IMG/VR virus record: IMGVR_UViG_3300028800_000001
Location: 124,001-188,000 of that record
Length of the DNA: 64,000 nucleotides
Reading direction: 5' to 3' (one strand)
Part shown: piece by piece, positions 8,648 through 49,424 of the stretch
Position numbering within the stretch: the first letter of the stretch is position 1
How the letters are laid out: each line of letters opens with the position of its first letter
The notes under the pieces: generated by a model
What the model was told of the DNA's origin: nothing
The model's database searches: none
Seen by the model: only the letters and a program-made list of their open reading frames with translations
Made by a program: the position numbers and the translations under genes

Positions 8648-8836
8648 TTACATCACTATTTCGATAAGGGGAACCGAAGAATTTGTCGGCACGCGCTGGA
8701 TGCACTGGGCACAAATCTTCTCGTTCATCGGCACGCGTATCTAGAAAGAAGCGTTCCCACTCTTCTTCTGTGAACAGTTCTACGTAGTATGGTCGTCTCG
8801 CGTTACGAGCGTCCAGACAACTTTTGAAGATGCGTC

Positions 8837-9858: not shown

Positions 9859-9923
9859 TGTTTTCTCTCTTTCTGGATAGTAAACAACTGATCGTGATGA
9901 TCATTTTCTTTTTGCATGAATAT

Positions 9924-30766: not shown

Positions 30767-32119
30767 ATGATCGCCTGTCCTGGTTGTGCCACAACCGCAC
30801 GCGCAACCGCGAAATATTGTCAAACGTGCGGTGCATCCCTTACCGCCACAGGAAATCTCACCGGTATCCTGGCTGGAAAGTACCTCATCACTGGTGTTCT
30901 TGGACAAGGTGGTATGGGAGCCGTCTACAAAGCGCTGGATAGCACCATCAATCGTGTCGTTGCGATCAAAGAGATGAGCCAGAGCACGCTGGTTGGACTG
31001 GAATATCAAAAAGCGGTCACCGCATTTAAAAATGAAGCGCGCCTACTTGGAAACCTTCGTCATCCAATGCTACCTGCTATCTACGAGAACTTCACGGAAA
31101 ACGGACGTTGGTATCTGGCAATGGAATATATCGAAGGCAAAACGCTTGAAGACGTAATGCACACGCCTGATCTGGCTGCGCTGCTACGTTATGGCCCACA
31201 GCTTTGCGATGTACTCACTTTCTTGCATACTCAAAATATCACCTTTCGCGATATCAAACCAGCCAATATCATGATTACGCCAGAGGACGAAGTACGTCTG
31301 ATCGACTTTGGGATTGCACGCTTCTTTGCGGCCAACACCAAAGATACCAGCGCTCTTGGCTCGCCTGGATATGCGGCCCCTGAGCAGTACAAAAAGGGCT
31401 CTGAACCAAAGAGTGATGTCTATGCACTTGGCGCGCTCTTTCATTTTTTACTCAGTGGCACTGATCCTTCTGATGCCCCATTTCAGTTTGTGTCACTACC
31501 AAAGGTAACACATCCAGCGCTTCTGCGTCTCAATCGCTTAGTGGAAGAAATGATTACGCTGGACAAAGCGAACCGACCTGATAGTTTCGCTGTCCAGGCA
31601 CGATTGATCAGCATTCGCGATGACTATCGCAGCAATCCAATGATTGCCGCACCAAAGGCTGATGCCACCGTGTTTCTCATTTCCTCCATGTTAGACGGCA
31701 AAACCGAGAAGGATAAAATGCTCTTGGAACGTCTTGAGAAATCAATTGTCCTGGTTGGAAAAATGCGTGGCAAAACCATTGCCTGTGAATACATCGCACC
31801 AACAGTGAAAGAAGTAGAACGCATCATGCGCGAGAGCGGCATTATCCTGGTTGTCTGTACTCCGGCAATCCTTACCAACGAATATGCGAGCGAAGCTGTG
31901 AACACAGCCATTGAGTACCGTACCAATCACCGTGATGAAGTACTCGTTGTTCCTATCTATGGAAAACAATGTGAGTGGGGAAAAAACTATCTCTACCTCA
32001 AAAATTATGCAGGTGGCCCAAGGGACCGCAAACCAATTGTACGTTCTAGCGGCTACAGCGACGAAGCGCTCAATGAGATTGGGTTGACCGTCTATCAAGT
32101 CCTAGAGGAGAAATTTTAA
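30767..32119 (+). CDS. Hanks-type Ser/Thr protein kinase with N-terminal zinc ribbon and C-terminal TIR-like domain
   Basis: CPGC...CQTC; GQGGMGAVY, AIKEM, FRDIKPANIM, DFG, GSPGYAAPEQ, SDVYALG; C-terminal flavodoxin-like pattern VFLISS..LERLEK..IILVVCTPAIL..Y..VVPIY (TIR call less certain). Confidence 0.9.
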   Translation: MIACPGCATTARATAKYCQTCGASLTATGNLTGILAGKYLITGVLGQGGMGAVYKALDSTINRVVAIKEMSQSTLVGLEYQKAVTAFKNEARLLGNLRHPMLPAIYENFTENGRWYLAMEYIEGKTLEDVMHTPDLAALLRYGPQLCDVLTFLHTQNITFRDIKPANIMITPEDEVRLIDFGIARFFAANTKDTSALGSPGYAAPEQYKKGSEPKSDVYALGALFHFLLSGTDPSDAPFQFVSLPKVTHPALLRLNRLVEEMITLDKANRPDSFAVQARLISIRDDYRSNPMIAAPKADATVFLISSMLDGKTEKDKMLLERLEKSIVLVGKMRGKTIACEYIAPTVKEVERIMRESGIILVVCTPAILTNEYASEAVNTAIEYRTNHRDEVLVVPIYGKQCEWGKNYLYLKNYAGGPRDRKPIVRSSGYSDEALNEIGLTVYQVLEEKF

Positions 32120-33839: not shown

Positions 33840-34192
33840 TAGTGCACCGCCCCTTCTGCTTGCAGTTCTTCACAGTTCATTTTGAGAAATGCGTGTTCCT
33901 GATAAAGATCAATGATGCTATGGATGCGCATGATATGCGAACCAAGCACGATACGCATACCAGGAACGACGCCGGTCTTATAGCGGATTTGTACGGTATA
34001 GGATTCTTTAGGATAGAGCTGTTGCGCAAAATAGGTCTCTGAACCAGAATTGGGCTCCACACTTGCCCATACACGAATAAAGGTAGCCCAGGTGCGTGTC
34101 TCTCCACCCGCACCATCAGGAGCGTCTACCGGTTTTTGTATCGTGATAAATCTGGTCATCTCGCCAGGATTCAAATGCGCTTTATTCGTCAT
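33839..34192 (-). CDS. head closure/head-tail adaptor (SPP1 gp16-like)
   Basis: ITIQKP..DGAGG...W..VWASVEP.SG.E, IRY, MRI. Confidence 0.88.
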   Translation of the reverse strand: MTNKAHLNPGEMTRFITIQKPVDAPDGAGGETRTWATFIRVWASVEPNSGSETYFAQQLYPKESYTVQIRYKTGVVPGMRIVLGSHIMRIHSIIDLYQEHAFLKMNCEELQAEGAVH

Positions 34193-34842
34193 CCGTAATA
34201 CACCCGATACTTCTCAAACTTATCCTGAATGCCAGGAGGCATGCCAGGATTTTTCCCGCCTGTATTTTGATGTGAACCATGCGCGTCATCTTTGCCTTCG
34301 CGGTAGTCATACCAATAGGCAATGAGCTCCAGCATGGCGCGCTTGAGCGTGAAAGGAAACTGTGTAAGCGAATAGCCTGCGTGATAGTTCACCCGAAAAC
34401 GTGGATTATATGGCCCAATCCACAGTGTCCACTGGCTCCCAAGAAAGGAGTACGCAGAAGTCAGCAAATACACGCGACACGGCTGCTGCGAAAGATCGAC
34501 CACATAGTTACTGGAATCGATCACTTGAAAAATACCAGGACTGGTTTCTCCTTCAATGCTTTCGATAGAAGTCACAGGTGGAAGGGGTACTTCAAGCAGG
34601 CTTTGCCGGTAGCCAACACCACCAGAAAGAGGCCCAGAAGGGATGAGTGGTATTTCCAGAACCGCCTGAAGCCCTTGTGGCGCAAACGCACGTCGTGTTT
34701 CTGCCTCACCAAATTCACGCGCTTCACTGATCATGAGGGCAAGGTAGCTGTCATCATCAGAGAAATCCAGGCGAAGATGTTGGCGTACTTCCTGTGTGGT
34801 CAGTGGCTCCTGCGTAATCGGAGTAACGACAGTAACCGTCAT
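34189..34842 (-). CDS. head-tail connector (HK97 gp6-like)
   Basis: EPLT..EVRQHLRLD..DD.YL..I..ARE, Y.AGY, AMLELIAYWYDYRE. Confidence 0.88.
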   Translation of the reverse strand: MTVTVVTPITQEPLTTQEVRQHLRLDFSDDDSYLALMISEAREFGEAETRRAFAPQGLQAVLEIPLIPSGPLSGGVGYRQSLLEVPLPPVTSIESIEGETSPGIFQVIDSSNYVVDLSQQPCRVYLLTSAYSFLGSQWTLWIGPYNPRFRVNYHAGYSLTQFPFTLKRAMLELIAYWYDYREGKDDAHGSHQNTGGKNPGMPPGIQDKFEKYRVYYG

Positions 34843-35709: not shown

Positions 35710-36183
35710 TTACGGATTTGGAGCAGGTTTGTGCATCGGGTAACCAAGGATCGCCTGGACCCCGTAGACACCGCCAACACCAGAGCCGGAAGTCGTCCAC
35801 ACAAGCGGTACACGCAGATAACGCTTCTGCCCAATGTAGCCAACTTTCACATTCGTGTTTGCTGTCACATTGGCGGGAAACGCCCCTTGCATGTCGCCTG
35901 CGGCAACCGCTGTATAACTACCGGTCGAGTCAGTATCCGCCTCGTAGAGAGTGAGGGCATGAGTGCTGTCGGTTACTGCGCCAACAATCACTTCAAGCAC
36001 CACACCGTGATACCCATACGTGTCAATCGTCGTTGAAGAACCGAGGGTAATTGAGGCTGCATGCGCTGCCACCGGAACGGCAACAGATGCCAATTCTAGA
36101 TTGTGATATAAATCACGCTTTGCCATTTCGACTCCATCCTTGCAGTGGGGTATATGGAGGTTTCTCCATTTCTTCGCCTGCAA
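35710..36183 (-). CDS. probable capsid-associated/decoration protein
   Basis: follows the capsid gene; beta-rich TIDTYGY..V.LEV..GA...KVGYIGQKRYLR; likely start MAKRDLY. Confidence 0.55.
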   Translation of the reverse strand: MQAKKWRNLHIPHCKDGVEMAKRDLYHNLELASVAVPVAAHAASITLGSSTTIDTYGYHGVVLEVIVGAVTDSTHALTLYEADTDSTGSYTAVAAGDMQGAFPANVTANTNVKVGYIGQKRYLRVPLVWTTSGSGVGGVYGVQAILGYPMHKPAPNP

Positions 36184-36481: not shown

Positions 36482-37198
36482 TCAGGCTGATTTATTTCTG
36501 AGATATTCAAGAAACTCGTCAGCCGTTTTATCGCATTTTGAGAAATTGCAGTATTTGCACGCTGGAACAATATTGCTGATATCATTACTGCCGCCCCTGG
36601 AAAGAGGTTGCATATGATCAACAGTAAACCAGTTTGCTTGCTCACCACAATAATAACAGCACCAGTCAAGCTGATTGCATACTTCCTCAAATTGCTCGTT
36701 CGTCCAGTTACCAGGGGCACCCGCAAGGCGAGCACGATAGGCCACTAAGTTTCTGCGCTTTGTCGCCCGATAAAGCTCAGGCTTGGCCGCGTAACGGGCT
36801 CGTGCCAGCGCATTTTGCTCTTCCCGAAAAGGCGCTTTGTTCAACCGATAGTTTTTGCGACAATGCTCTTTCCACTGCTCAGGATTATCTTCAATCCATT
36901 GCTTGTGGTCAGCCTTGCGCTTCTCCCAATGCTCTTTACGCCATACAGCATTATGCTGCTTATAGTATTCAGGATTTTTAGCGTATGAATCTTTGTTGTT
37001 TTGCTTAATCTTTTCAGGATTCGCTTTGCGATAGTTTTTGGCATAACCAGCTTCCCGTACATGCTCCCGTTTACTTGAGCATGTATCACAAAAGCGTCTG
37101 CGCTTCGCATATGTCTCAACACTGGCTCCGCAAGTTTCACACAAGATAGTATAAAGCTTATTCGATCTTGGCATATTGTTTCCTTTCTGAATATACAA
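36482..37198 (-). CDS. free-standing HNH endonuclease
   Basis: CYYC...DHMQPLSRGGSN..SNIVPACKYCNFSK; N-terminal zinc finger and basic helical repeats. Confidence 0.9.
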   Translation of the reverse strand: MYIQKGNNMPRSNKLYTILCETCGASVETYAKRRRFCDTCSSKREHVREAGYAKNYRKANPEKIKQNNKDSYAKNPEYYKQHNAVWRKEHWEKRKADHKQWIEDNPEQWKEHCRKNYRLNKAPFREEQNALARARYAAKPELYRATKRRNLVAYRARLAGAPGNWTNEQFEEVCNQLDWCCYYCGEQANWFTVDHMQPLSRGGSNDISNIVPACKYCNFSKCDKTADEFLEYLRNKSA

Positions 37199-37307: not shown

Positions 37308-38134
37308 CTATGAAACTGAGATTTTGTGCTTAAGAATCGCCTCCGGCAATACCACTTGACCGCCAACACGTTTGCGTGCGATAAAGCCGATCTGCCCCAG
37401 GTCTGCGTAGCGCTCTGTTAAGCGTGTCATCACCATCTGAACGCGGTCTACGATGACGTAGGCACGTTTGAAATCCCCAAACATGATCGGATAGGCATTG
37501 GCCGCAACAATCGGCATATCCGGTGTTTCCATGTAGGGATGGTCAAGGATCGTATTTGGAATGTCAGAGGCAATTCCAGGTTGCCAGAGATATTGACCGT
37601 ACGAGTCCTTCAGGGTACGGATCGTCCCAAGGGTGGAACGGTTCATAATCCAGGTTGCATTCTTTGCGTACGCGCTTTTGAGCGTATAGGCAGTTGTGAT
37701 CAGGCCATCAGCCGTCAGCGCACTACCGCTGGTACTAGGGACGTAACTGACACTGCTATTGGTAAGCAGCCCTTCTGGTTTGCCGACACCGTTACCGTTG
37801 ACGAAGGCTGCACCTTCGGTGACTGCAAACTGCTCAGCGCATTCCATCTGGATTTGCTGTGCCATATCAAAGTACGCATCTTCCATATCAGCATATGTGA
37901 TCAAGACGAGTGCATACATCTCGTGGCTCATGATCTCTTCTTGACCGTACTTGAGCCCCTGCGTCTCTGCGCGGCTGGCCTGCTCAGCAACCCAGGACGC
38001 GGCAAAGGTCGCGGTACGCGTTGGGAAGAGGATCGATTTGTTTTCGGTCTGTCTCACCGTTACGATATCACGAATAGGAGAATACAGCACGATCTGTTTG
38101 ATGATATCCTGCACAAAGTCAGTTGGGGCTAAGT
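37308..38134 (-). CDS. major capsid protein (HK97 fold), exon 2
   Basis: LAPTDFVQDII..SPIR, ASWVAE, FVNGNGVGKPEG, WIMN, LKDSYGQYLWQP, FGDF, FIARKRVGG. Confidence 0.92.
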
Positions 38135-38964
38135 CGCGCCCCGCCCTACGCTTTCGCGTAGGATCGGACCATATCTTCACAACGTACATACTGAAAACCA
38201 GTATGTTTATAGCTATTTGTTGGCGTGTTTTAGCTCGCATCTTTACGGGCCTCCATCATCGCCCAAATTTCACTATTATGACGTTGCATCTCGCGTGTGG
38301 CCTCTGAGGAGCCTCTACGTGACATAGGACCAACTAGCTCAAAGATAGCCATTTCTTCTTCGGTGTACGGCTTAATACGCCCTGCACCGCGTTTGCCATC
38401 TCCAATGTTTGGATTTCTGATGCCCTGGTTTGAAAGACGCAATTCGCAAAATCGAATGATTAATCGTGCTCGTTCTTTCTTTGATCCGATAAGATAGGGT
38501 TGTATCGCTTTCAAAAGAATAACCGCCTGTGCCATACGTTTTATTGTGACGCGATAGTTATCTTTGACGCCAGTTCTGCCTGTTGCGGCGCGAATGTAGC
38601 CATTGACTCCTAAACGTTTCATAATATCGGCTGTCATCAAAACAATTACCTCTTCTGTGTTGCATACATGAATTTCTGGTCGTATGCTGCGATATTGTCT
38701 ACCTTTTTGATCATCCAGGCGAAGGCCAATATAACCTTCTCCATCAATTATCCCTGCTAGCCATCCTAGTTCTACGGGAGTTACCTGCTGATTGTCCATT
38801 TCATCCATTTGGATTCATCCTTTTCATTGTCACCTAGTTAGTAGAAAAGGCTTTAGGGGTTTCCAGCATATAGCGAGATTTACCGTGAGCACTCGGCTCG
38901 TGTAACCCTTAAAGCACTGCTACAGAATAATTCTGATTGCGTGCGATAAAAGCGGTTACGCCGT
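38135..38964 (-). ncRNA. group I self-splicing intron (830 nt) in the major capsid gene
   Basis: 5' exon ends in U and intron ends in G; P4 UGCUG(38868-64)/CAGCA(38790-86); P3 AUCUCGC/GCGAGAU; P7 GGCCA/UGGUC in UCCUCAGAGGCCA and AAGAUAUGGUCC; P9 CCUACGC-GAAA-GCGUAGG; splicing restores GGY|LAP in frame. Confidence 0.92.
38230..38808 (-). CDS. intron-encoded LAGLIDADG homing endonuclease
   Basis: WLAGIIDGEGYI motif; single-motif (homodimer) size. Confidence 0.92.
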   Translation of the reverse strand: MDEMDNQQVTPVELGWLAGIIDGEGYIGLRLDDQKGRQYRSIRPEIHVCNTEEVIVLMTADIMKRLGVNGYIRAATGRTGVKDNYRVTIKRMAQAVILLKAIQPYLIGSKKERARLIIRFCELRLSNQGIRNPNIGDGKRGAGRIKPYTEEEMAIFELVGPMSRRGSSEATREMQRHNSEIWAMMEARKDAS

Positions 38965-39322
38965 ACCCACCACCAGTGTCATCCACCTGTTGCAGCACTT
39001 TGACTTCGCCAGGACCGACCAATGGTACCAGATCTTTTTGTTCGCGAGAAAGAGAGCCATACCCTTTGGTAAGTGCCTGAATAAGCGCCATCTTAGATTC
39101 GCTCTTGCTTTCGCCACGCTCTGCCGGAGAGCCCAGGCCAGGACGTGCCATCGCTGTCTCTAGGTGTCCAATACGATCATTCAAGCGATCCATGTGCTGC
39201 TTTGTCTCGCCAGAAACATTGCCAAGCTGCTTGAGCTCTTTATCTTGAACGTCTACGACGCTCTGCATTTCACTCCATGTCGAGCGCATTTCCTCGTACA
39301 TGGTCTTCAAATCAACGCTCAT
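38965..39322 (-). CDS. major capsid protein exon 1 (delta-domain-like coiled coil)
   Basis: CAGGAG RBS; coiled N-terminus ending DDTGGG-T; spliced product is 394 aa (358+827 nt). Confidence 0.9.
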
Positions 39323-39469: not shown

Positions 39470-39892
39470 CTACTGAATCTGTACGCCTTTTTCGACCCCA
39501 CCAAGGGTGGGCTTGCGTACTGGCGCGGTGAATGCGCTTTTGCTTCCAATCAAACTCTGGTCAGGGGTTGGCTTATTTGCGCCGCCAGTGCCTTGATCAG
39601 GACTGCTGGTATTCGCCTTCCCAATAAGTGACTGATCAGGGCTAGGACGATTAGGTGCGCCTGTGCCCTGATCAGGGCTGGAGCCGCCGCTCGATCCGCT
39701 GCTGGATGCGCTTCCACCATTAAAATCTTTAATGATCGTTGCGTTGTCGGTATCGAGCCCCAATGCATTCTTCCCAATCATCGGGTTACCAGAACCAGGA
39801 TAGGTGCTTCCATTATCAGAAGTACCAGCGCCCCACATTCCAGTTCCATTGTTGTTCACATTTGGATTGTCAATTTTTGCCTTTGCCATCAT
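39470..39892 (-). CDS. Gly/Ser/Pro/Asn-rich low-complexity protein with 25-aa tandem repeat
   Basis: SSPDQGTGxxNxPxPDQSLIG twice; GGAG RBS. Confidence 0.65.
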   Translation of the reverse strand: MMAKAKIDNPNVNNNGTGMWGAGTSDNGSTYPGSGNPMIGKNALGLDTDNATIIKDFNGGSASSSGSSGGSSPDQGTGAPNRPSPDQSLIGKANTSSPDQGTGGANKPTPDQSLIGSKSAFTAPVRKPTLGGVEKGVQIQ

Positions 39893-39900
39893 CGTTCTCC

Positions 39901-41559
39901 TTATGCTTCACTATGCTCACGAATACGCGTTTTCATTTCAGAAAGCAATTTGCGAATATCTTCCATCGAAGTAGAATCCTCTTCTGGCTTCGATTTCTCT
40001 TCTTCCTCAAACTCTTCTTCTTTGATCAGAGGCGCTTCTTCCTCTTTCGTTTGTTCAGTCGGAATCTCTTCCTCAACTGGGAGCTCTTCAGCCTTTTGAT
40101 GACTATTTGGTTTGGTCGGAGCATCATCAAGCGCTGCGCTGTTGGGCACATCCGGCTTCTCATCTTCGTCTTCGTCAGCAGGATTATACGGATTTTTATC
40201 TTCAAGCATGTTCTGCAACTCTTGTACTGCTTCCGCAATACTATCAAGCGCATTGGTGATACGATTTTTCGAGAAAGAAGAAAGTGTACGGCCTTCTTTC
40301 ACATAAGCACGAAGTGCTTGCTTCATGGCCCTGGTCGAGAAGGTGAAGTGCGCAATCGTCATACTCTTTTGCTCAGTAGGATGATCACTCTTCTCGCCAA
40401 TGCCATCGTCATCATCGCCGTCTTCGTCACCGACTCCAGCTTTGACTGCCTCATCCGTCCAGTCCAAAATAGCTTGCTCGAACTGTTTGAGCGAATCTTC
40501 GATCCCCGCTTTGGCGTCACCACCTGCCATATGTAGATGCTCAAAAACACTGGTCATCAGTGCACCAAAGAGGTCGTAGAGTTCTTCAGTTAGTTCATCT
40601 GGCTGGCGATCATTGAGCACAGAGGTGAAATCACGTGGAGATGTATCGTGCTTTGTTTGCATTGATAGTTTTTCATCCTTTTCCGCACTATCGTTATCCC
40701 ATGGAGCAGTAATGGTTTTATCATTAAATTCATTTGCCATTTTTTTATAGTAGGAGGCGATGCGCGTTTTCATAGCTTCGTCGGCATCTCCAAACTCTCC
40801 ACCACCCATTGCGCCTTGTAGAACTGCGGCACACGTCATAATGCCCTTTGGCATCGCAACAGGATTGCCATTGCGAATGAAGCAAAAGGGCATTTTATAA
40901 TCACCAGCGCGGTCATCACTTTCATCATCCACATAAAAGTGCACTGACTTCATTTTTGCGGTATCCAGATCGCCATTCTCGCTTGTGGCCCAGGCAAGGA
41001 TTTCACGATGTGCTCGTGCACCATCCCACGGAGCGTTGCGCTCGCCAAGCGGCCAATCCGTTGACCCGCAAGCCGCTTTCACATTGGTGACCCGCGTGAG
41101 CTCATTGGCAGGAAACGTCACCACAGAACCTTCCCACATACGCAGTTCTAGAAGGTGACGCACCTCGCCGCTGTAGCGCTGTTTAATGGTGTCGTAGCCG
41201 ATAGATAAACCGTCCAAATAGCCCATACGGAGGCCAGAATAGGCTTGCTGCCCACGCGGCGTGGAAAGATCGATCTGTCCTTGAACACGCAGTCCACGAC
41301 CATCTTCCTTCATATTGGTAAAGCCACCAATCGGCTCCTTTGGATCGTGTTGCCAGAGGACGGGAAATAAATATTTTCCACCACGCGACGTGGCATCTTT
41401 AATCGTTTTTTGGAATGCTCCTGGCTCAACGATATCTTTATAGGAGTCGATGTTTCCAAAGACTGAGAGATACCCCTCGAACGAGCCACTCGTCTCGTCA
41501 AGCGCCTTGAATTCTTGCAACACAATATCTTTTGTTTGTGGTGCACTGGTGACTGGCAT
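39901..41559 (-). CDS. HK97-family prohead maturation protease with extra domain and acidic scaffold-like tail
   Basis: FEGYLSVFGNID..D.VEPGAF, LWQHD, GLSIGY, EGSVVTFPAN. Confidence 0.92.
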   Translation of the reverse strand: MPVTSAPQTKDIVLQEFKALDETSGSFEGYLSVFGNIDSYKDIVEPGAFQKTIKDATSRGGKYLFPVLWQHDPKEPIGGFTNMKEDGRGLRVQGQIDLSTPRGQQAYSGLRMGYLDGLSIGYDTIKQRYSGEVRHLLELRMWEGSVVTFPANELTRVTNVKAACGSTDWPLGERNAPWDGARAHREILAWATSENGDLDTAKMKSVHFYVDDESDDRAGDYKMPFCFIRNGNPVAMPKGIMTCAAVLQGAMGGGEFGDADEAMKTRIASYYKKMANEFNDKTITAPWDNDSAEKDEKLSMQTKHDTSPRDFTSVLNDRQPDELTEELYDLFGALMTSVFEHLHMAGGDAKAGIEDSLKQFEQAILDWTDEAVKAGVGDEDGDDDDGIGEKSDHPTEQKSMTIAHFTFSTRAMKQALRAYVKEGRTLSSFSKNRITNALDSIAEAVQELQNMLEDKNPYNPADEDEDEKPDVPNSAALDDAPTKPNSHQKAEELPVEEEIPTEQTKEEEAPLIKEEEFEEEEKSKPEEDSTSMEDIRKLLSEMKTRIREHSEA

Positions 41560-41998: not shown

Positions 41999-44900
41999 CT
42001 ATTCAAGAATACGCTCGCTTTGGCGCAAAGAAAGGACAGAATGCTCTGGCGCAAGCGTCAAAATATGTTGCCCACTACTTGTCGTGAGCGCACGTTTATT
42101 GGAAGTTGTTGGAATGATAAAACTACTAAAACTGGCCTGTCGGTCTGTTGCGTGCAAGATATCGATGCTTGCGAGATACACCGTGATGGTGGTCGTTGCC
42201 CGATCAAAATGCACCTCTGTGATGAGCAGATGCTCCTGCATCACAAAGAGCACCACCAACGCAAGCGACTCTTGTATTTGAAGTGGCTCTTGTATGAGTA
42301 CAGTGCGCGAAACCAGGAGGCCATCAGTAGTGTTCAGCGTTTCAGTGAGTGCAACTGCTTGCGTTTCAAGAACGGTTTCGCTCAGCACTGGCGTTTCCGA
42401 GATAAAAACGCTTTGCGTGATAAGACCGCGATCACTGGCACTCAAAAGGTCTACCGTGAGCGCGCTACTAACAAGCGCTATCTGGTCGGTCTGCGTCACA
42501 CTTTCAGCAATAAAGACGGTGCTTTGCTCAAGAACACTCTCTGTGATACTGAGCAACTCAATGCGCGAGAAACTGGCACTCCAGAAGGATGTAATACTCA
42601 GGGATTCAATTGGGACAAACGCTTCTTGTACAGCACAGCCATCACTGATCACGAGCGTTGACTCTGCAACAAAGATGCTTTGAGTCTCTAGCACAGTCTC
42701 AGTGAGCGGATTGCTCTCGCTTACAAAGACGCTGGTTGTATTCAGGCTGATTTCACTGACGCTGAGTACGCCTGTTTCCAGCGCGGCCCTTTGTAACGCC
42801 ATACTTTCCGCAATTGAAAGGAGCGCACTTTCAATCTCAGTTATGATCGCAAGCGGTTGGTCGGCAAGCGAGAGCACGGAAGTTTCTGCGACCGTGATCG
42901 GGTACAGTTGCGATTCAGCGACACTGAGTGCGTCTACAAAAAGCGTCGTCTCACTGGCGTATTCCTGATCGCTGAGCACCCCTGCACTCTCTGTCACCAT
43001 CACAGAACTACTCAGCAGCGTTTGTTCGCTCACCGTGAGCAATTCCACCCTACCAGGGGTTGCACTGAAGAATTCGGTGATACTGAGGGGAGCCGTTTCA
43101 GTTGCCGTCTCTTGTGTGAAGAATGCATCACTGACCGAAAGCAATTCTGCCGCGAGCGGTGTACTGGCAAAGAATGCGCTATCGCTGATAGTGACTGCGT
43201 CGCTCACCACAGAAACCTGACTTGGCGTGGAGAGGTCGCTCACACTGAGTAGCTCAATGATCGTTGGCCCAGTAGTGGTAAAATCCGTGACAAAGTAGAC
43301 ATCCAGGCTCGTGAGCGTGGGAAACAAGAACATGCTCTCGCTCACTGAGACCGGATCAATGGGTAAGAACGTTTCTACGTAGGCAATGCTCTCCACCTGT
43401 GTCAGACCATCAGCAATACTTACGCTTTGCGTGGTAAGTGGTATTTCTACCACCGAGAGCGCTTCGTTGACCGCAAGACTTGTGGTTTCACTAAAGCTCT
43501 CAACCGTACTGAGTCCATCACTAAAAAGTGTATTCTCTGTGAAGAGCAAGGCTTCCGTTTGCGCCAGATTATCAACAAAGAGCGTCTGTTTTGTAAAGAG
43601 TGGCGTATCCGCGATACTAAGCACTACGGTTTCTATAATAGTGAATGCATACAGCGCGGCATCGGTAGCAGTGAGACTTTCTATGGTGAATACGGTGTCT
43701 ACAAAGAATGGTGCTTCCGTTTGTGTCAGACTATCAGTTGGTTGTATGGCCTCTGATAAGAGTGGGGCTTCACTCACGCTGAGTGCGTCAACCGGCTGAA
43801 TAGACTCTGAAAGCAGCGGCGTCTCAGTCACGGAGAGCGCATCTATTGGCTGAATAGTTTCTGAGAAAAGAGAAGTATCAGCGCCACTCAAGCTATCCGT
43901 TTGCGCCACGGTTTGTGTGAGTAAGAAACCATCGCTTGCACTGAGTGCATCCGTTGATGCCATCACCAGCGGAATAATATCGCTTACCAGAAGACTTTCA
44001 ATCGTATTCCAGGTTGTGTTCATGAGCGCGTAGGTTGGCGCGGCCACATGAGCATGGTTGGCAATCTGGACAGGCGTCAAAATGGCTTGATAAATAGCGA
44101 CTTCGTCAATGATGCTAGAAAGATAACTCCCTGCAAAATCAAAGATACTGCCAATTTCTATGGGCGCTTTCGTGCCTGCTGTCGTCAGCGCGCCGTTCAG
44201 GTACACCAGCGTCGTTGTACCCGTTGAAGTCACTGCAACATGTTGACTCACGCCTGCGGTGCTGATCCAAAATTCCAGCGAGAAGACTGACCAGGAAGTA
44301 TAGTTGAGCGTATAGGGAAAGCTAAAGACGCCGGTTGTGCCATCAAAGAGAATTGCTGTGCCACTGTCACCAGCGATGAGCCCCGTTTGCGCAAGCGTAA
44401 AGGTTCCTGAAAGTTTGCCATGTTGATTATTATTGGTAAGATCATGGGCAACGGTGCCCGATGACTCGTTCAAACGATAATACGCCTTCGGACTATCGGC
44501 AAGAATCATCGCAGCATAACTGGCCTGCGCTTCAGAAGCGCAGAGTAAATCAGTAGCGAAAGAAGTCTCTGACAAAAGAGGGGTTTCAGTCACCGTGAGC
44601 GCTTCTGTTGGCTGAAGGGTTTCTGAGAGGAGATAGCTATCACTCACCGAAAGCGAATCAGTCGAGGCCATCGTAACTGTGGTGACCCCCGAACTGTATC
44701 CGGTCGTGAGGATCTCAAAGTTACTATCGCCAGTGCTATTGGTGGAGATACGATTTAAGCGAAAGTTGAGCGCGGCATCTCCACCGGCATTGGTGGTAAT
44801 CGTGACCCAAATATCAGCATACAGCAGATCGCCAGAGACAAAGGTGGTTGAGGCATTGGTTGTGCCCGAAAGTGCATACGTGGTAATTGTACCATTGACC

Positions 44901-46030
44901 GTCTGCCCAGCAAGAGACATATCAATGAGCTGCGTATAGACCCCGCCATTATATTTATACAAGCGAAAATGAAGCGTGCAGCCGGTTACTGACCCTATAA
45001 GCGTGCCATCGGTGTGCCCTGTATTTAAACGCAAGTTCGCGGTATAAGGACCGGCTGCAAGGGTATTACCAACGAGATTGAGAATTGCTGTCTCCAGCAT
45101 AAACCCTTTGCCAGTCGGAGAACCGATAGAACCTGACGCAGCCCAGGCAGAGGCAGTGCCTTGCGCGGTAATTTCACCAAAGGCCGTGGAGGTTCCTATA
45201 AGACTATAGAGCTGCGTCACATTGACGTTATCAGTGCCATGCGTGATGCTCATCTGACTCGTCGTGCCGAGCGTGGAACCTGCGGTATTGGTAAAATAGA
45301 GCGGCAACGCAGTGAGCGCTTTATACGTAATCGAGTCGCTGGCAGAAAGACCATCGCTCGAAGCCATCAGGCTTGCAATACCTATATTGTAGTGAAGAGC
45401 GACTTGCGTCGAGGATAAAACGGTGGAATACCATGCGACTTCATCAATCGTCCCGTTCCAAAAATCAGAGCCCGTAGTATCCGTTCCGATATCAGCAAGA
45501 CTGGCTGTAATACTATACGCATAGGCAGCAGACCCCGCAGAGACGCCATTCACATAGAAGATGGCGGTTGTCCCATTATAAGTCCCTACCAGATGATAAA
45601 GCGTACTCGTGGTAACGGTTGCGGAGCTGACATTGTTAGCGACCCAACTGGAGAGGGTAAACTTACCGGTTGATTGATTGTAGCCAATAGACGCCTGATT
45701 TGCGCCACTATTGGTCCCGAACATCATCACTGTTGGAAAGCCGCTGCTAGGAAGCACTGAGGGTGTTTTCACCCAGGCTTCCATCGTCCAAGAAGAAGCG
45801 CCAGTCGGCAGACTCGTGGTAGGGATCGCAACTTTACTACTTGACCCGTTAAAGAGCACTGAGGGATCAGTATCCCCTTTAATGAGTGCGGTCTGATTGA
45901 GCGTCACGCTGGTATACGTTCCGTTTTGTGCCTGACTGCCAAGATCAGTTGCGACTGTACCGGAAGTTTCTCCTAAACGATAATAGCGAATAGGAGAATC
46001 AGCAAGAACGGTGCTCGAATACAGACTCAC
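41999..46030 (-). CDS. large virion protein with two LamG/ConA domains and long Ser/Thr/Glu-rich repeat stalk
   Basis: DSPIRYYRLGETSG..IDEVAWY and DSPKAYYRLNESSG..IDEVAIY; dozens of LSVSE-type repeats of about 20 aa. Confidence 0.8.
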   Translation of the reverse strand: MSLYSSTVLADSPIRYYRLGETSGTVATDLGSQAQNGTYTSVTLNQTALIKGDTDPSVLFNGSSSKVAIPTTSLPTGASSWTMEAWVKTPSVLPSSGFPTVMMFGTNSGANQASIGYNQSTGKFTLSSWVANNVSSATVTTSTLYHLVGTYNGTTAIFYVNGVSAGSAAYAYSITASLADIGTDTTGSDFWNGTIDEVAWYSTVLSSTQVALHYNIGIASLMASSDGLSASDSITYKALTALPLYFTNTAGSTLGTTSQMSITHGTDNVNVTQLYSLIGTSTAFGEITAQGTASAWAASGSIGSPTGKGFMLETAILNLVGNTLAAGPYTANLRLNTGHTDGTLIGSVTGCTLHFRLYKYNGGVYTQLIDMSLAGQTVNGTITTYALSGTTNASTTFVSGDLLYADIWVTITTNAGGDAALNFRLNRISTNSTGDSNFEILTTGYSSGVTTVTMASTDSLSVSDSYLLSETLQPTEALTVTETPLLSETSFATDLLCASEAQASYAAMILADSPKAYYRLNESSGTVAHDLTNNNQHGKLSGTFTLAQTGLIAGDSGTAILFDGTTGVFSFPYTLNYTSWSVFSLEFWISTAGVSQHVAVTSTGTTTLVYLNGALTTAGTKAPIEIGSIFDFAGSYLSSIIDEVAIYQAILTPVQIANHAHVAAPTYALMNTTWNTIESLLVSDIIPLVMASTDALSASDGFLLTQTVAQTDSLSGADTSLFSETIQPIDALSVTETPLLSESIQPVDALSVSEAPLLSEAIQPTDSLTQTEAPFFVDTVFTIESLTATDAALYAFTIIETVVLSIADTPLFTKQTLFVDNLAQTEALLFTENTLFSDGLSTVESFSETTSLAVNEALSVVEIPLTTQSVSIADGLTQVESIAYVETFLPIDPVSVSESMFLFPTLTSLDVYFVTDFTTTGPTIIELLSVSDLSTPSQVSVVSDAVTISDSAFFASTPLAAELLSVSDAFFTQETATETAPLSITEFFSATPGRVELLTVSEQTLLSSSVMVTESAGVLSDQEYASETTLFVDALSVAESQLYPITVAETSVLSLADQPLAIITEIESALLSIAESMALQRAALETGVLSVSEISLNTTSVFVSESNPLTETVLETQSIFVAESTLVISDGCAVQEAFVPIESLSITSFWSASFSRIELLSITESVLEQSTVFIAESVTQTDQIALVSSALTVDLLSASDRGLITQSVFISETPVLSETVLETQAVALTETLNTTDGLLVSRTVLIQEPLQIQESLALVVLFVMQEHLLITEVHFDRATTTITVYLASIDILHATDRQASFSSFIIPTTSNKRALTTSSGQHILTLAPEHSVLSLRQSERILE

Positions 46031-48104: not shown

Positions 48105-49424
48105 GTGAGTACAAGTATAGCACAAAAGCGCATTATGCGCACAGAACCAATCTTTTATGTCTACTTTTTCTATCGAGGAGAAAGCACTGTGCCTTTTTAT
48201 ATTGGGAAAGGATGTAAAAAGAGAATAGACGGCCACGAATACTGCGCTCGAAAGCACGCTACGTGCAAACATCTTACCTGCCGCATTATTCGTAAAGAAT
48301 GGCGCGAGGGAAGAAATATCACCAAAGTCAAAATAGCTGATGGCATCACAGAACAGGCCGCGTTTAGTCTAGAGAAGTTGTTCATCGATCTTGGAGCCGT
48401 GTACAAATGGCCCCTGGTCAATAAAACATTTGGTGGCGAAGGTGTAAGTGGATATATTCGAGATAAAGAATGGAGAGCAAGAAGGAGTAAACTTGCAAAA
48501 GAACTTGTTAAGCAAGGTAAATTTGAACATCTCAAAACTGTTAATGCCGGTCGCATTCATACGCAAGAAGAGCGAAGAAAGCGCAGCGAGAGTATCAAAA
48601 GAGCGACTTCTACGCCAGAGGCTCACGCACTTAAAATTCTTCGATCAAAGGAAATGTGGAAATCAGAAACATATCGAGAGAACCATAGAAGAGCCATGCA
48701 TACGCCAGAGGCTCACGAAAAACTTGCCTATTGGAAGGGAAAAGAATCTGCCCAGGCAAAAACGTACCCTGGCTTTATTGCTCCTGATGGAACGATCTAT
48801 CAAGATGTAAAAAATCTTACGCGTTTCGCAAAAGAACATGGTTTGCTCGTCTCAGCGCTCTGTTGCGTCGCACAAGGAAAAGTTGCAAGTCACAAAGGCT
48901 GGAAGCGCTATCCACCTCTCCCAGAAAAAGAGGCACGTTACCAGTTTACAGACCCAGAAGGAAAAATTCATAGAGTTGTCAATCTAAGCGCATTTTGTCG
49001 AGAACATAATCTTGATGCCAAAGCAATGTCAGATGTCGCTTTTGAGAGAAGAAGTATACACGACGGTTGGCAAAAATACCCGCCACAAGTTCTCAAACAA
49101 TATCAATGCGCTGGCTTTCGATCTCCCGATGGCACCGAATACAGAGACATTTCAAAACTGAAAGATTTTTGCATCGAGCATAGTCTTGATTACTCTGGAA
49201 TGGCAAAAGTGAACACCGGTAAAAAGCGAACGCATAGCGGTTGGTCAAGTTTGGCCCAGGAAGCCCCAAAACCAAAATACAATTTCATCGATCCAAACGG
49301 TATCACTTACAATACGAATAATCTAACGCAATTCTGTAGAGAACATGGACTCGACCAAGCCTCTATGAGTTCTGTCCATAGTGGCGCGTACAGACAATAT
49401 AAAGGTTGGAAGAAAAGTACATAA
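48105..49424 (+). CDS. GIY-YIG homing endonuclease with four tandem ~50-aa DNA-binding repeats
   Basis: FYVYFF...FYIGKG..KR..H; repeats F..PDG..Y...NL..FC.EH.L....V..G....H.GW. Confidence 0.85.
   Translation: MSTSIAQKRIMRTEPIFYVYFFYRGESTVPFYIGKGCKKRIDGHEYCARKHATCKHLTCRIIRKEWREGRNITKVKIADGITEQAAFSLEKLFIDLGAVYKWPLVNKTFGGEGVSGYIRDKEWRARRSKLAKELVKQGKFEHLKTVNAGRIHTQEERRKRSESIKRATSTPEAHALKILRSKEMWKSETYRENHRRAMHTPEAHEKLAYWKGKESAQAKTYPGFIAPDGTIYQDVKNLTRFAKEHGLLVSALCCVAQGKVASHKGWKRYPPLPEKEARYQFTDPEGKIHRVVNLSAFCREHNLDAKAMSDVAFERRSIHDGWQKYPPQVLKQYQCAGFRSPDGTEYRDISKLKDFCIEHSLDYSGMAKVNTGKKRTHSGWSSLAQEAPKPKYNFIDPNGITYNTNNLTQFCREHGLDQASMSSVHSGAYRQYKGWKKST

What the first reader, a model, noticed from the sequence alone, without database searches (positions are those of the whole stretch)
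37308..39322. Group I intron with LAGLIDADG endonuclease splitting the major capsid gene
Seen: all core pairings are readable (P3, P4, P7 with GGCCA/UGGUC covariation, P9 with GAAA loop, and a possible P10 GGC(G)UAA with the 3' exon UUAGCC). Removing 38135-38964 gives an in-frame 394-aa HK97 capsid protein (GGY|LAP). The endonuclease ORF overlaps the ribozyme at both ends: its start codons encode the P4 3' strand and its 3' end runs through P7/P3. Known: phage group I introns mostly sit in DNA-metabolism genes and usually carry HNH or GIY-YIG endonucleases. Inference: production of the most abundant virion protein depends on splicing, and translation of the nuclease may compete with ribozyme folding.
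Basis: partly seen in the sequence, partly recalled or inferred. Interest (0 to 1): 0.66.

Follow-up and report, generated by a model that had tools for sequence, protein, structure and literature searches.

The report
Self-splicing intron in phage capsid gene
The only major capsid gene of a 327-kb soil phage is split by an 830-base group I intron that carries its own LAGLIDADG homing nuclease; the call is well supported by sequence, but this kind of element has already been described in another phage's capsid gene.

Summary
On the minus strand, an 830-nt insert (38964..38135) splits an HK97-type major capsid gene into exon 1 (39322..38965) and exon 2 (38134..37308).

- **Relatives without the insert:** ten metagenomic capsid genes 81-85% identical in exon 2 lack it and read DDT[GT]GG[YF]LAP.DFVQD straight through. 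That is exactly the predicted spliced product, GGY|LAP.
- **Ribozyme:** Rfam's group I model matches end to end (32.9 bits, E 2.6e-6, below the 50-bit curated cut-off because a 460-nt ORF sits in P6). P3, P4, P7 (GGCCA/UGGUC), P8, P9 (GAAA loop), U at -1 and a terminal G are all present.
- **Guide sequence:** GUGGGU|AC pairs with GUGCUCAC (38892..38885), just 5' of P3, and a 4-bp P10 joins ACUU to GAGU.
- **ORF:** the 192-aa ORF (38808..38230) is a single-motif LAGLIDADG enzyme of the I-MsoI/I-CreI type. It overlaps P5-P4-P6 and P7-P3-P8, as claimed.
- **Splicing:** untested; no RNA runs exist.

It is not new in kind. Mycobacteriophage LittleE has a spliced, LAGLIDADG-carrying intron one nucleotide away in the homologous capsid codon. 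Related introns also sit in two other capsid gene families.

The parts
38965..39322 (-). Capsid exon 1: 119 codons plus the first base of the Tyr codon. Coiled-coil, delta-domain-like N-terminal part ending ...DDTGGG-U.
   Evidence: ORF list. tblastn shows its homologues lie directly upstream of the exon 2 match in ten loci without the insert, with one codon between. No Pfam or PHROG hit of its own.
38135..38964 (-). Group I intron, 830 nt, from A1 (38964) to the terminal G (38135).
   Evidence: RF00028 aligns 38939..38145, model positions 1-253, 32.9 bits, E 2.6e-6. The insert is absent from ten relatives and identical in a second metagenome contig, L002. Its boundaries are covered by DNA contigs from independent rhizosphere runs.
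37308..38134 (-). Capsid exon 2: AC plus 274 codons plus stop. This is the HK97-fold mature capsid body, beginning (Y)LAPTDFVQDIIK.
   Evidence: Pfam Phage_capsid PF05065, E 8.6e-75. phrog_10 major head protein, 5.1e-61. [quoted passage not shown]
38963..38970 (-). P1 5' strand: the last six exon bases GUGGGU plus intron bases A1 and C2. The 5' splice site follows U38965.
   Evidence: Minimum-free-energy and centroid fold of 38979..38881, -33.3 kcal/mol, z -2.57. Forcing other partners for U-1 costs 7-13 kcal/mol.
38885..38894 (-). Internal guide sequence GAGU-G-CUCAC. GUGCUCAC (38892..38885) pairs with GUGGGU|AC in P1, with U-1 opposite G38890 as a wobble pair. GAGU (38894..38891) pairs with the first four bases of exon 2 in P10. 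It lies 5 nt upstream of P3, so there is no P2 between P1 and P3.
   Evidence: An 8-bp P1 of this kind arises in 3.9% of 20,000 shuffles of intron nt 3-85, and P1 plus P10 in 0.95%. In silico only; there is no covariation support because no diverged copy was found.
38131..38134 (-). P10 3'-exon strand ACUU, the first four bases of exon 2.
   Evidence: Complementary to GAGU at 38894..38891 (A-U, C-G, U-A, U.G).
38893..38962 (-). 70-nt structured insert inside the P1 loop: GGC/GCC, GUAACC/GGUUAC, CUU/AAG and a 31-nt terminal hairpin. It contains the stop codon (38911..38909) that ends the exon 1 reading frame 18 codons into the intron.
   Evidence: Fold; coordinates; ORF 38909..39322.
38873..38879 (-). 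P3 5' strand AUCUCGC, which pairs with GCGAGAU at 38294..38288.
   Evidence: Covariance-model alignment. It is part of a 23-mer identical to bona fide 79-88-bit group I introns in other viral contigs.
38863..38868 (-). P4 5' strand UGCUGG, followed by J4/5 AAA (the 'P' element). It pairs with UCAGCA at 38791..38786.
38819..38850 (-). P5 extension helix CCUUUUC/GAAAAGG. Its 3' strand contains the Shine-Dalgarno-like AAAGGA, 10 nt upstream of the ORF's AUG.
   Evidence: Read from the sequence. This is inference from complementarity, not a covariance-model pair.
38230..38808 (-). Intron ORF of 192 aa: a single-motif LAGLIDADG homing endonuclease (LAGIIDGEG at residues 17-25). Its body lies in the P6 loop. 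It also spans the P5 3' side, the P4 3' strand and P6, and then J6/7, the P7 5' strand, the P3 3' strand and the P8 5' strand, before stopping in L8.
   Evidence: PDB I-MsoI, E 4.7e-8. phrog_5046, 1.2e-14. Pfam LAGLIDADG_3, 22.2 bits against a 22.5 cut-off. 30% identity over its full length to the intron ORF of L017, including the shared C-terminal SSE.TRE peptide encoded by the ribozyme's R element.
38786..38791 (-). P4 3' strand UCAGCA (the 'Q' element), which is also ORF codons 6-8 (N-Q-Q).
38288..38302 (-). 'R' element: P7 5' strand GGCCA (38302..38298), then CAC, then P3 3' strand GCGAGAU (38294..38288). It lies inside the ORF, where it encodes ...EATRE...
   Evidence: P7 differs from GACUA/UAGUC of the consensus and of relatives L017, L021 and LittleE by one compensated pair (U-A to C-G) and one A-U to G.U change.
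38180..38286 (-). P8 domain: the closing helix CAACGU/ACGUUG encloses two sub-helices. The ORF stop codon (38232..38230) lies in the first of them.
   Evidence: Covariance-model alignment. Fold of 38310..38135: -56.6 kcal/mol, z -2.98.
38167..38179 (-). 'S' element: J8/7 UGAAGAUA followed by P7 3' strand UGGUC.
   Evidence: Near-exact match to the consensus UgAAGAUAUAGUC.
38135..38162 (-). P9 hairpin CCUACGC-GAAA-GCGUAGG (38162..38145), followed by the 10-nt tail GCGGGGCGCG that ends in the terminal G (38135).

Best explanation
The element is a mobile group I intron that carries a homing-endonuclease gene, inserted in the only major capsid gene of a 327-kb rhizosphere phage.

**Splicing (inferred).** The capsid pre-mRNA is transcribed through the insert. 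Ribosomes translating exon 1 stop at a UAA 18 codons into the intron. The intron then folds:
- P1 forms between the exon end GUGGGU|AC and the guide GUGCUCAC, placing a U.G wobble at the 5' splice site.
- P3-P9 form the catalytic core.
- An external guanosine attacks after U38965.
- P10 (ACUU/GAGU) aligns exon 2, and the terminal G (38135) is exchanged into the G-binding site in P7.
- The exons are ligated to UAC, giving a 394-aa HK97-type capsid protein that reads ...DDTGGGYLAPTDF...

**Mobility (inferred).** The 192-aa single-motif LAGLIDADG protein encoded mostly in the P6 loop probably acts as a homodimer. It would cut intron-less alleles near GGTGGGT^ACTTAGCC during co-infection, so that repair copies the intron in. 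A maturase role is possible.

**Translation versus folding (inferred).** The ORF's ribosome-binding region lies in a P5 extension helix, and its coding sequence supplies the 3' strands of P4, P6 and P3 and the 5' strands of P7 and P8. Nuclease translation and ribozyme folding on one RNA molecule should therefore be mutually exclusive.

**Shown versus inferred.** Shown here: the sequence anatomy, the covariance-model match, the precise absence of the insert in homologues, and the family of the ORF. Inferred: the splicing chemistry, the guide pairing, homing and the translational interplay.
For: 1. **Precise, frame-restoring insertion.** Ten capsid genes 81-85% identical in exon 2 have the exon 1 and exon 2 matches separated by exactly one codon (L003-L008, L011 and the cut-off L009; L025 and L028). 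The eight displayed read DDT[GT]GG[YF]LAP.DFVQD across the site.
2. **Ribozyme match.** RF00028 aligns over all 253 model positions, E 2.6e-6. A whole-genome scan again hits only this spot.
3. **Shared core.** A 23-nt P3-J3/4-P4-J4/5 string is identical to group I introns scoring 79-88 bits, above Rfam's cut-off, in other viral contigs.
4. **Splice-site rules.** U at -1, a terminal G, an 8-bp P1 with the U.G wobble and a 4-bp P10 adjacent to P3. The local fold gives -33.3 kcal/mol, z -2.57. The combination arises by chance in about 1% of shuffles.
5. **Compensatory change.** P7 shows a compensated pair relative to close relatives.
6. **ORF family.** The ORF is a LAGLIDADG enzyme with the acidic residue of the motif retained.
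7. **Single capsid gene.** There is one PF05065 gene in the genome, flanked by a prohead protease and a head-tail adaptor. Near-identical intron-containing DNA occurs in several independent rhizosphere runs with no intron-less joint. A viable phage population therefore carries it.
8. **Published precedent.** An experimentally spliced intron sits at essentially the same site in LittleE (PMC3706429).
Against: - The Rfam score (32.9 bits) is under the 50-bit gathering threshold, and the default scan is blank.
- There is no RNA evidence. All ten runs that hold the sequence are DNA.
- The only other copy of the intron found, L002, is identical to it, so P1, P10, P5 and P6 have no covariation support. 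P5 and P6 are short and irregular.
- The guide sequence sits after a 70-nt structured P1 loop and there is no P2. This is unusual, and two alternative local pairings can be drawn.
- Pfam's LAGLIDADG_3 score misses its cut-off by 0.3 bits. The single-sequence AlphaFold model was uninformative (pLDDT 37).
Confidence: 0.87

Rival explanations
1. The intron and splice junction are the same, but a different guide pairing is used. The guide would be local, at intron nt 6-15. One form pairs GUAACC(GC) with the exon end GGGUAC. The other pairs GCUU with GGGU and adds the first reader's P10, GGC(G)UAA x UUAGCC. The helices at 38893..38962 would then be a conventional P2 domain rather than an insert in the P1 loop.
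For: LittleE's capsid intron has a textbook local guide (GCGUA-GCCACC) within its first 20 nt. This intron's first bases, GGCGUAACCGC, look like a shortened version of that string.
Against: Forcing U-1 to pair with G12 or A8 costs 13 or 7 kcal/mol in the local fold. The A8 version has no U.G wobble at the splice site. The G12 version has only 4 bp, two of them G.U. GUAACC is perfectly complementary to GGUUAC at 38907..38902 in the best fold. The closest relative, L017, also appears to carry its guide directly before ..UAAAUCUCGC with no P2 (read by eye).
Confidence: 0.15
2. The gene is fractured and no splicing occurs. A nuclease gene with a decayed ribozyme landed at the boundary between the delta domain and the capsid body. 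The phage then makes a separate 137-aa scaffold-like protein (39322..38909) and a 310-aa capsid protein starting at the AUG at 38240.
For: Both halves are open reading frames with their own stop or start codon. The break lies near where HK97-type delta domains are cleaved off; in LittleE the mature N-terminus lies 10 residues upstream of the splice site. The Rfam score is sub-threshold.
Against: - Every core element of the ribozyme is intact, including both strands of P3, P4, P7, P8 and P9, the terminal G, and guide pairings to both exons.
- The invariant GG[YF]LAP motif would be cut in two and replaced by 36 unrelated residues.
- The AUG at 38240 lies inside the nuclease ORF and the P8 domain.
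Confidence: 0.05
3. The insert is an assembly artefact, or the gene is a dead pseudogene in a defective genome.
For: The genome is known only from metagenome assembly.
Against: The same 830 nt occurs in a second assembly from another sample (L002). Logan contigs from independent runs bridge both boundaries at 99% identity or more: X3 records 5 and 6, and X8 record 29. The record has direct terminal repeats and is rated complete. Both exons and the nuclease ORF are intact.
Confidence: 0.02

Closest known systems
Mycobacteriophage LittleE capsid-gene intron (gene 13/14; Pope et al. 2013, PMC3706429; JF937101)
   Same: - It is a group I intron of about 0.8 kb in an HK97-type major capsid gene.
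- It is inserted in the same conserved motif. LittleE reads GGU|UAC (G-G|Y-A-V-P) and this intron reads GGG-U|AC (G-G-Y|L-A-P), so the sites are 1 nt apart.
- It carries a single-motif LAGLIDADG ORF.
- Its Rfam score is similar and also sub-threshold (30.7 bits).
- Its splicing was proven by RT-PCR and N-terminal protein sequencing.
   Different: - LittleE's ribozyme is compact (about 200 nt at the 5' end). Its nuclease gene lies downstream of the core on the opposite strand. Here the ORF is on the sense strand in P6 and overlaps the core.
- LittleE has a local guide with a 5-bp P10. Here the guide follows a 70-nt P1-loop insert.
- There is no detectable DNA similarity beyond the consensus, and the nucleases align only over the motif (27 aa).
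- The hosts and genomes are unrelated: a 109-kb actinophage against a 327-kb rhizosphere phage.
Phage T4 td intron with I-TevI (and the other T-even introns)
   Same: [quoted passage not shown] It has an in-frame stop soon after the 5' splice site, a nuclease ORF looped out of P6, and sequestration of the ORF's ribosome-binding site so that nuclease translation does not disrupt splicing (from reviews PMC3984707 and PMC2988022, and general knowledge).
   Different: The T4 introns sit in nucleotide-metabolism genes, carry GIY-YIG or HNH enzymes, belong to subgroup IA2 with P7.1/P7.2, and have ORFs largely confined to loops. Here the host gene is the capsid gene, the enzyme is LAGLIDADG, and the ORF supplies five core strands.
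I-CreI / I-MsoI introns of green-algal chloroplast 23S rRNA genes
   Same: The nuclease is the same structural type: one LAGLIDADG motif, about 160-190 aa, presumed homodimer. I-MsoI is the best PDB match.
   Different: Those introns interrupt rRNA genes in organelles, so translation of the host gene is not an issue. Sequence identity is low and the E-value is only 4.7e-8 against a tandem construct.
Metagenomic relatives found here: the L017 and L018 introns
   Same: They share the identical 23-nt P3-P4 core. They also sit in major head protein genes (phrog_267 and phrog_1357). L017's 156-aa LAGLIDADG ORF is 30% identical and likewise runs through P7-P3-P8.
   Different: The capsid protein families and the insertion sites are different. 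L018's first intron carries a 252-aa ORF that I read as a double-motif LAGLIDADG enzyme (by eye only; Pfam and PHROGs gave no hit), and the same gene holds a second, ORF-less intron. Their splice junctions were not verified.

Membership tests
Group I catalytic intron (Rfam RF00028) | Match to the family covariance model at or above the curated gathering score (50 bits) | tested here: not met
   32.9 bits, E 2.6e-6, full model 1-253. Nothing was reported at the gathering threshold. The shortfall is attributable to 460-nt, about 55-nt and about 75-nt insertions in P6, P5 and P8. The experimentally spliced LittleE capsid intron scores a similar 30.7 bits.
Group I catalytic intron (Rfam RF00028) | Conserved core helices P3, P4, P6, P7, P8 and P9 with the P/Q/R/S sequence elements | tested here: met
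   All are aligned by the covariance model and verified by coordinate. S element: UGAAGAUAUGGUC against the consensus UgAAGAUAUAGUC. P7 carries a compensated pair. P5 and P6 are short.
Group I catalytic intron (Rfam RF00028) | U at the 3' end of the 5' exon forming a U.G wobble with an internal guide sequence (P1), and a G as the last intron base | tested here: met
   U38965 pairs with G38890 inside an 8-bp P1. The terminal G is at 38135. This is a prediction only, with no covariation.
Group I catalytic intron (Rfam RF00028) | Removal restores an uninterrupted host gene colinear with intron-less homologues | tested here: met
   Ten intron-less homologues have exactly one codon between the exon 1 and exon 2 matches.
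Group I catalytic intron (Rfam RF00028) | Guanosine-dependent self-splicing | not testable with these tools
   No RNA runs hold the sequence. Testing needs RT-PCR or in vitro splicing.
LAGLIDADG homing endonuclease (I-CreI-type homodimeric subfamily) | LAGLIDADG motif ending in an acidic catalytic residue, one copy per chain | tested here: met
   LAGIIDGEG at residues 17-25 (E24 acidic), with only one motif in 192 aa.
LAGLIDADG homing endonuclease (I-CreI-type homodimeric subfamily) | Significant sequence match to family models or solved members | tested here: met
   I-MsoI, E 4.7e-8 over residues 9-131. phrog_5046, 1.2e-14. Pfam LAGLIDADG_3, E 1.7e-4, but 22.2 bits against a 22.5-bit cut-off.
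LAGLIDADG homing endonuclease (I-CreI-type homodimeric subfamily) | alpha-beta-beta-alpha-beta-beta-alpha fold | tested here: inconclusive
   The single-sequence AlphaFold2 model has mean pLDDT 37 and is unusable.
LAGLIDADG homing endonuclease (I-CreI-type homodimeric subfamily) | Site-specific cleavage of the intron-less allele | not testable with these tools
   Needs a cleavage assay on the intron-less junction sequence.
HK97-fold major capsid protein (Pfam PF05065 Phage_capsid) | Family model match above the cut-off, within a head-morphogenesis gene module | tested here: met
   252 bits against a 24.2-bit cut-off. A prohead protease lies upstream and a head-tail adaptor downstream.
Intein (considered and rejected) | Insert is in frame with the host protein, without stop codons | tested here: not met
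   The exon 1 frame stops 18 codons into the insert (38911..38909). The nuclease ORF has its own start and stop.

The most novel reading that the evidence does not exclude
The GG[YF] codon at the start of the mature HK97-type capsid protein may be a recurrent homing hot spot. It would be used by LAGLIDADG-bearing group I introns in phages as distant as a mycobacterial siphovirus and a 327-kb rhizosphere phage. In addition, one intron lineage, recognisable by an identical 23-nt P3-P4 core and an ORF that encodes part of the ribozyme's R element as the peptide SSE.TRE, may specialise in major capsid genes of at least three unrelated capsid families. If so, capsid genes would be a regular niche for mobile introns rather than an exception, and such introns might act in competition between co-infecting phages.
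Probability: 0.35. Interest if true: 0.55.

Novelty: new member of a known kind. Interest (0 to 1): 0.38.

Why it matters
The capsid protein is needed in hundreds to thousands of copies per virion, so this phage's yield would hinge on fast, efficient RNA self-splicing late in infection. That makes it a natural test case for how a ribozyme folds on a heavily translated message.

The near-identical insertion point in LittleE, and the related introns in two other capsid families, suggest that conserved capsid motifs are repeatedly targeted by homing nucleases. This bears on marker exclusion and competition between co-infecting phages.

Practically, it is a warning for annotation. Gene callers will report this capsid as two fragments plus a 'hypothetical' ORF, and Rfam at default thresholds misses ORF-bearing introns like this one and the proven LittleE intron.

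Tried and rejected
- **Rfam at gathering threshold:** blank. The intron appears only in E-value mode.
- **Cultured-phage collection:** blastn of the whole locus gave no match, and tblastn of the nuclease gave no match.
- **RNA evidence:** none of the ten runs that hold the locus is RNA. DNA contigs from four runs showed no intron-less joint, so presence/absence polymorphism within this phage could not be shown.
- **Search for a diverged copy of the intron, to get covariation for P1/P10:**
  - Capsid-based scans of viral and metagenome contigs returned only intron-less relatives or identical copies.
  - The R-element pattern found only the identical copy.
  - The S-element pattern gave one extra hit, L035. 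It is a chance 18-mer inside a protein-coding frame I read by eye as thymidine-kinase-like, with no Rfam hit.
- **Structure prediction:** single-sequence AlphaFold2 of the nuclease gave pLDDT 37, unusable.
- **Intein reading:** rejected because of stop codons in the insert.
- **Alternative in-frame junction** (GGU|...GGG|CGC, giving DDTGG-RDLAP): rejected because it destroys the invariant GG[YF] motif.
- **Subgroup (IA/IB/IC):** not assigned. The P8 region is branched and there is no comparative support.
- The exons were searched separately by reference. The only joining was a 60-nt display of the junction inside a script, for comparison with the intron-less relatives.
Full report
**Setting.** The window is bases 124001-188000 of a 327,295-bp IMG/VR virus record with direct terminal repeats, rated complete. 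It was assembled from a rhizosphere metagenome. The finding lies on the minus strand inside a head-morphogenesis module:
- a prohead protease fused to a long acidic tail (41559..39901; phrog_80, 1.8e-47);
- the capsid gene;
- an HNH endonuclease ORF (37198..36482);
- a conserved unknown (36183..35710);
- a head-tail adaptor (34842..34189).

- 39322..38909, 137 aa.
- 38808..38230, 192 aa.
- 38240..37308, 310 aa. Residues 35-306 are Pfam Phage_capsid, E 8.6e-75.

Taking out 38964..38135 (830 nt) leaves 358 + 827 = 1185 nt, which is 394 codons plus a stop.

**Comparative evidence, the strongest in this report.**
- A scan of IMG/VR with the exon 2 protein returned eleven loci.
  - One, L002, from a different sample, is 100% identical and has the same insert.
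  - In seven others (L003-L008 and L011), 81-85% identical in exon 2, the full exon 1 match ends exactly one codon before the exon 2 match, with no insert.
  - L009 is cut off upstream but shows the same one-codon spacing.
  - L010 lacks the junction region. L012 (50% identical) gave no exon 1 match.
- Across the site, the eight displayed relatives read DDT[GT]GG[YF]LAP.DFVQD. The predicted ligated product reads DDTGGGYLAPTDFVQD.
- The metagenome-contig scan added two more intron-less relatives, L025 and L028, and the source contig itself.
- The insert is therefore a discrete 830-nt element in a gene that is otherwise colinear. Its removal at U|AC...G|AC restores the most conserved motif of the protein.

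**Is it a group I intron?**
- At Rfam's gathering threshold nothing is reported.
- In E-value mode on 1.3 kb, RF00028 aligns from 38939 to 38145 on the minus strand across all 253 model positions. The score is 32.9 bits, E 2.6e-6.
- Searching the whole genome again finds only this place.
- The score is depressed by three long insertions: about 55 nt in P5, 460 nt in P6 and about 75 nt in P8.
- The experimentally proven LittleE capsid intron scores about the same, 30.7 bits.

The aligned core, verified by coordinate:

| Element | Sequence |
|---|---|
| P3 | AUCUCGC/GCGAGAU |
| J3/4-P4-J4/5 | UAUA-UGCUGG-AAA |
| P4 3' strand | UCAGCA |
| P6 | short: GG/CC plus CUC/GAG |
| P7 | GGCCA/UGGUC |
| P8 | CAACGU/ACGUUG, enclosing a branched insert |
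| J8/7 | UGAAGAUA |
| P9 | CCUACGC-GAAA-GCGUAGG |
| 3' tail | 10 nt, ending in G38135 |

- A 23-nt string covering P3 to J4/5 occurs exactly in five other viral contigs. Compact introns there score 79-88 bits, above the cut-off.
- Those relatives, and LittleE, have P7 as GACUA/UAGUC. Here one pair has changed on both sides (U-A to C-G) and one on one side (A-U to G.U).

**Splice sites and guide sequence.**
- The dinucleotide AC occurs both at the intron start and at the exon 2 start, so comparison alone leaves a 2-nt ambiguity. Only U38965|A38964 ... G38135|A38134 satisfies the group I rule of U at -1 and a terminal G.
- Folding the last 15 exon bases with intron nt 1-84 gives a different and much better arrangement. 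GUGGGU|AC (38970..38963) pairs over 8 contiguous bp with GUGCUCAC (38892..38885), with U-1 opposite G38890 as the wobble pair.
  - The intervening 70 nt form a stacked set of helices.
  - The energy is -33.3 kcal/mol, the same for the minimum-free-energy and centroid structures, with z = -2.57.
  - Forcing U-1 onto the nearer partners costs 7-13 kcal/mol.
- The four bases 5' of the wobble G (GAGU) are complementary to the first four exon 2 bases (ACUU), giving a canonical P10 contiguous with P1.
- In 20,000 shuffles, an 8-bp P1 with the wobble in place arose in 3.9%, and together with P10 in 0.95%.
- The guide lies 5 nt before P3, so the intron has no P2. The closest relative, L017, seems to be built the same way (by eye).
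- This model has no covariation support, because no diverged copy of the intron could be found. I give the local-guide alternative 15%.

**The ORF.**
- The 192-aa product has one LAGLIDADG motif (LAGIIDGEG, acidic E24).
- It matches I-MsoI in the PDB (E 4.7e-8, residues 9-131) and phrog_5046 (1.2e-14). It misses Pfam LAGLIDADG_3's cut-off by only 0.3 bits.
- It is 30% identical over its full length to the 156-aa ORF of the L017 intron.
- Both ORFs end with SSE.TRE, which is the translation of the ribozyme's J6/7-P7-P3 'R' element. The coding/ribozyme overlap is therefore conserved in this lineage, not an accident of one sequence.
- Overlap at the 5' end: the AUGs at 38808 and 38799 lie in the 3' side of P5, and codons 6-8 are the P4 3' strand.
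- Overlap at the 3' end: after the P6 loop, the ORF reads through the P6 3' strand, the P7 5' strand, the P3 3' strand and the P8 5' strand, and stops in L8 (38232..38230).
- An AAAGGA ribosome-binding motif 10 nt upstream of the first AUG is the 3' strand of a 7-bp P5 extension helix (CCUUUUC/GAAAAGG).
It is also a known theme: the review PMC3984707 shows ORFs that overlap core sequences, notes in-frame stops after the 5' splice site, and cites the I-TevI delayed-translation work.
- A single-sequence structure prediction failed (pLDDT 37).

**Does the phage depend on splicing?**
- PF05065 hits the genome once.
- Intron-containing DNA at 99% identity or more is present in Logan contigs of several independent rhizosphere runs. 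Contigs bridge both boundaries: X3 37687-38306, X3 38687-39001 and X8 38929-39121. No contig joins the exons directly.
- A phage population that persists across samples with its only capsid gene interrupted must express that gene, and splicing is by far the simplest way.
- The alternative of two separate polypeptides would cut the invariant GG[YF]LAP motif and would ignore an intact ribozyme. I give it 5%.

**Comparison with what is known.**
- Reviews state that phage group I introns usually carry GIY-YIG, HNH, PD-(D/E)xK or EDxHD enzymes, and that LAGLIDADG enzymes are mainly organellar, bacterial and archaeal (PMC3984707).
- However, Pope et al. 2013 (PMC3706429) described exactly this kind of element. 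Mycobacteriophage LittleE's HK97-type capsid gene carries an 819-bp intron with a LAGLIDADG-like ORF. RT-PCR and N-terminal sequencing (DLDRNNGTGGYAVP) confirmed splicing. They also cite a capsid-gene intron in lactococcal phage Tuc2009.
- I fetched LittleE (JF937101). Its exon 1 ends ...GGT GGT and its exon 2 begins TAC GCA GTC CCC. Its insertion point (GGU|UAC) is thus one nucleotide from the one here (GGG U|AC), in the homologous Gly-Gly-Tyr motif.
- The two elements otherwise differ:
  - LittleE's ribozyme is compact, and its nuclease gene lies downstream on the opposite strand.
  - Its guide is local.
  - The nucleases align only over the motif.
  - There is no DNA similarity beyond the family consensus.
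- Whether this is shared descent with rearrangement or independent capture of the same conserved target cannot be decided here.

**A wider pattern, noticed in passing.** Two of the contigs that share the 23-nt core also have their introns in major head protein genes of other families.
- **L017:** portal, scaffold, a 42-codon exon, an intron with the LAGLIDADG ORF, then an exon matching phrog_267 positions 72-327.
- **L018:** exons matching phrog_1357 positions 36-95 and 109-261, separated by an intron with a 252-aa ORF, followed by a second, 88-bit intron.
- The ORF contains YGVLLGDGHI, and I read it as a double-motif LAGLIDADG enzyme by eye. Pfam and PHROGs gave no hit for it.
- I did not verify these junctions.

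**Verdict.**
- It is a well-formed mobile group I intron with an I-CreI/I-MsoI-type LAGLIDADG gene, splitting the sole capsid gene of a very large soil phage.
- It is a new member of a known kind, not a new kind.
- What this work adds is a better guide-sequence model, the near-identity of the insertion site with LittleE, and the hint that one intron lineage recurs in capsid genes.
- Splicing, homing and the translation/folding interplay remain to be shown experimentally.

**Compliance with the operators' notes.** The joined spliced protein was not searched or folded, and the exons were handled separately by reference. No alternative genetic code was used.

Noticed in passing
window 36482..37198 (-): A 238-aa HNH/Endo VII-type endonuclease ORF (phrog_1035, 5.1e-21) lies immediately downstream of the capsid gene. 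It looks like a free-standing homing endonuclease, so the capsid gene is flanked or invaded by two different nuclease genes.
   Followed up: partly
window 48105..49424 (+): A 439-aa ORF matches homing-endonuclease PHROGs (phrog_2081, 3.2e-37; phrog_314, 6.2e-12). It is another likely mobile nuclease, about 9 kb from the capsid gene. The genome seems rich in such genes, although RF00028 finds only one intron.
   Followed up: no
L017 2954..4525 (IMGVR_UViG_3300003757_000023): A major head protein gene of a different family (phrog_267) appears to be split after about 42 codons. The intron has the identical 23-nt P3-P4 core and a 156-aa LAGLIDADG ORF, 30% identical to the window's, that also reads through P7-P3-P8-P7'. 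The splice junction was inferred by eye only.
   Followed up: partly
L018 8117..10300 (IMGVR_UViG_3300003154_000043): A phrog_1357 major head protein gene seems to hold two group I introns. The first carries a 252-aa ORF (8483..9241) containing YGVLLGDGHI, which I read as a double-motif LAGLIDADG enzyme by eye only; Pfam and PHROGs gave no hit for it. The second is ORF-less and scores 88 bits (9874..10167).
   Followed up: partly
L021 1763..2709 (also L016, L020): Compact 225-nt group I introns (79.3 bits) share the window's P3-P4 core. In L021 a GIY-YIG-like ORF (1763..2461) ends 23 nt upstream of the Rfam match. The interrupted gene was not identified.
   Followed up: no
window 38843..38881 (read laying loose ends): In three rhizosphere runs, short contigs match only about 30-40 nt of the P3-P5 core at 90-95% identity and then diverge on both sides. 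Other group I introns with this core therefore circulate in the same communities.
   Followed up: no
L022 (Mycobacterium phage LittleE, JF937101, 8350..10591): GenBank annotates the intron ORF gp14 as 'HNH endonuclease'. Its sequence carries a LAGLIDADG motif (IAWLAGLFEGEGCMSI), as the paper's text says. The insertion site is 1 nt from the window's.
   Followed up: yes
window 39470..39892 (-) and 39901..41559 (-): The prohead protease ORF has a roughly 380-aa acidic, low-complexity C-terminal extension, possibly a fused scaffold. It is followed by a 140-aa Gly/Ser/Pro-rich ORF with repeated SPDQ(G/S) units and no family match.
   Followed up: no
window 41999..46030 (-) and 30767..32119 (+): A 1343-aa ORF upstream of the protease has only a weak match to an unknown-function PHROG. 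A 450-aa ORF matches a phage serine-threonine kinase family (phrog_2361, 6.2e-47).
   Followed up: no
window 38121..38136 around the insertion site (exon junction TGGGT^ACTTAGCCCCA): The ligated-exon sequence contains a weak pseudo-palindrome, TGGG-N8-CCCA, centred 3 nt downstream of the insertion point. This would suit a homodimeric LAGLIDADG enzyme, but it could easily be chance.
   Followed up: no
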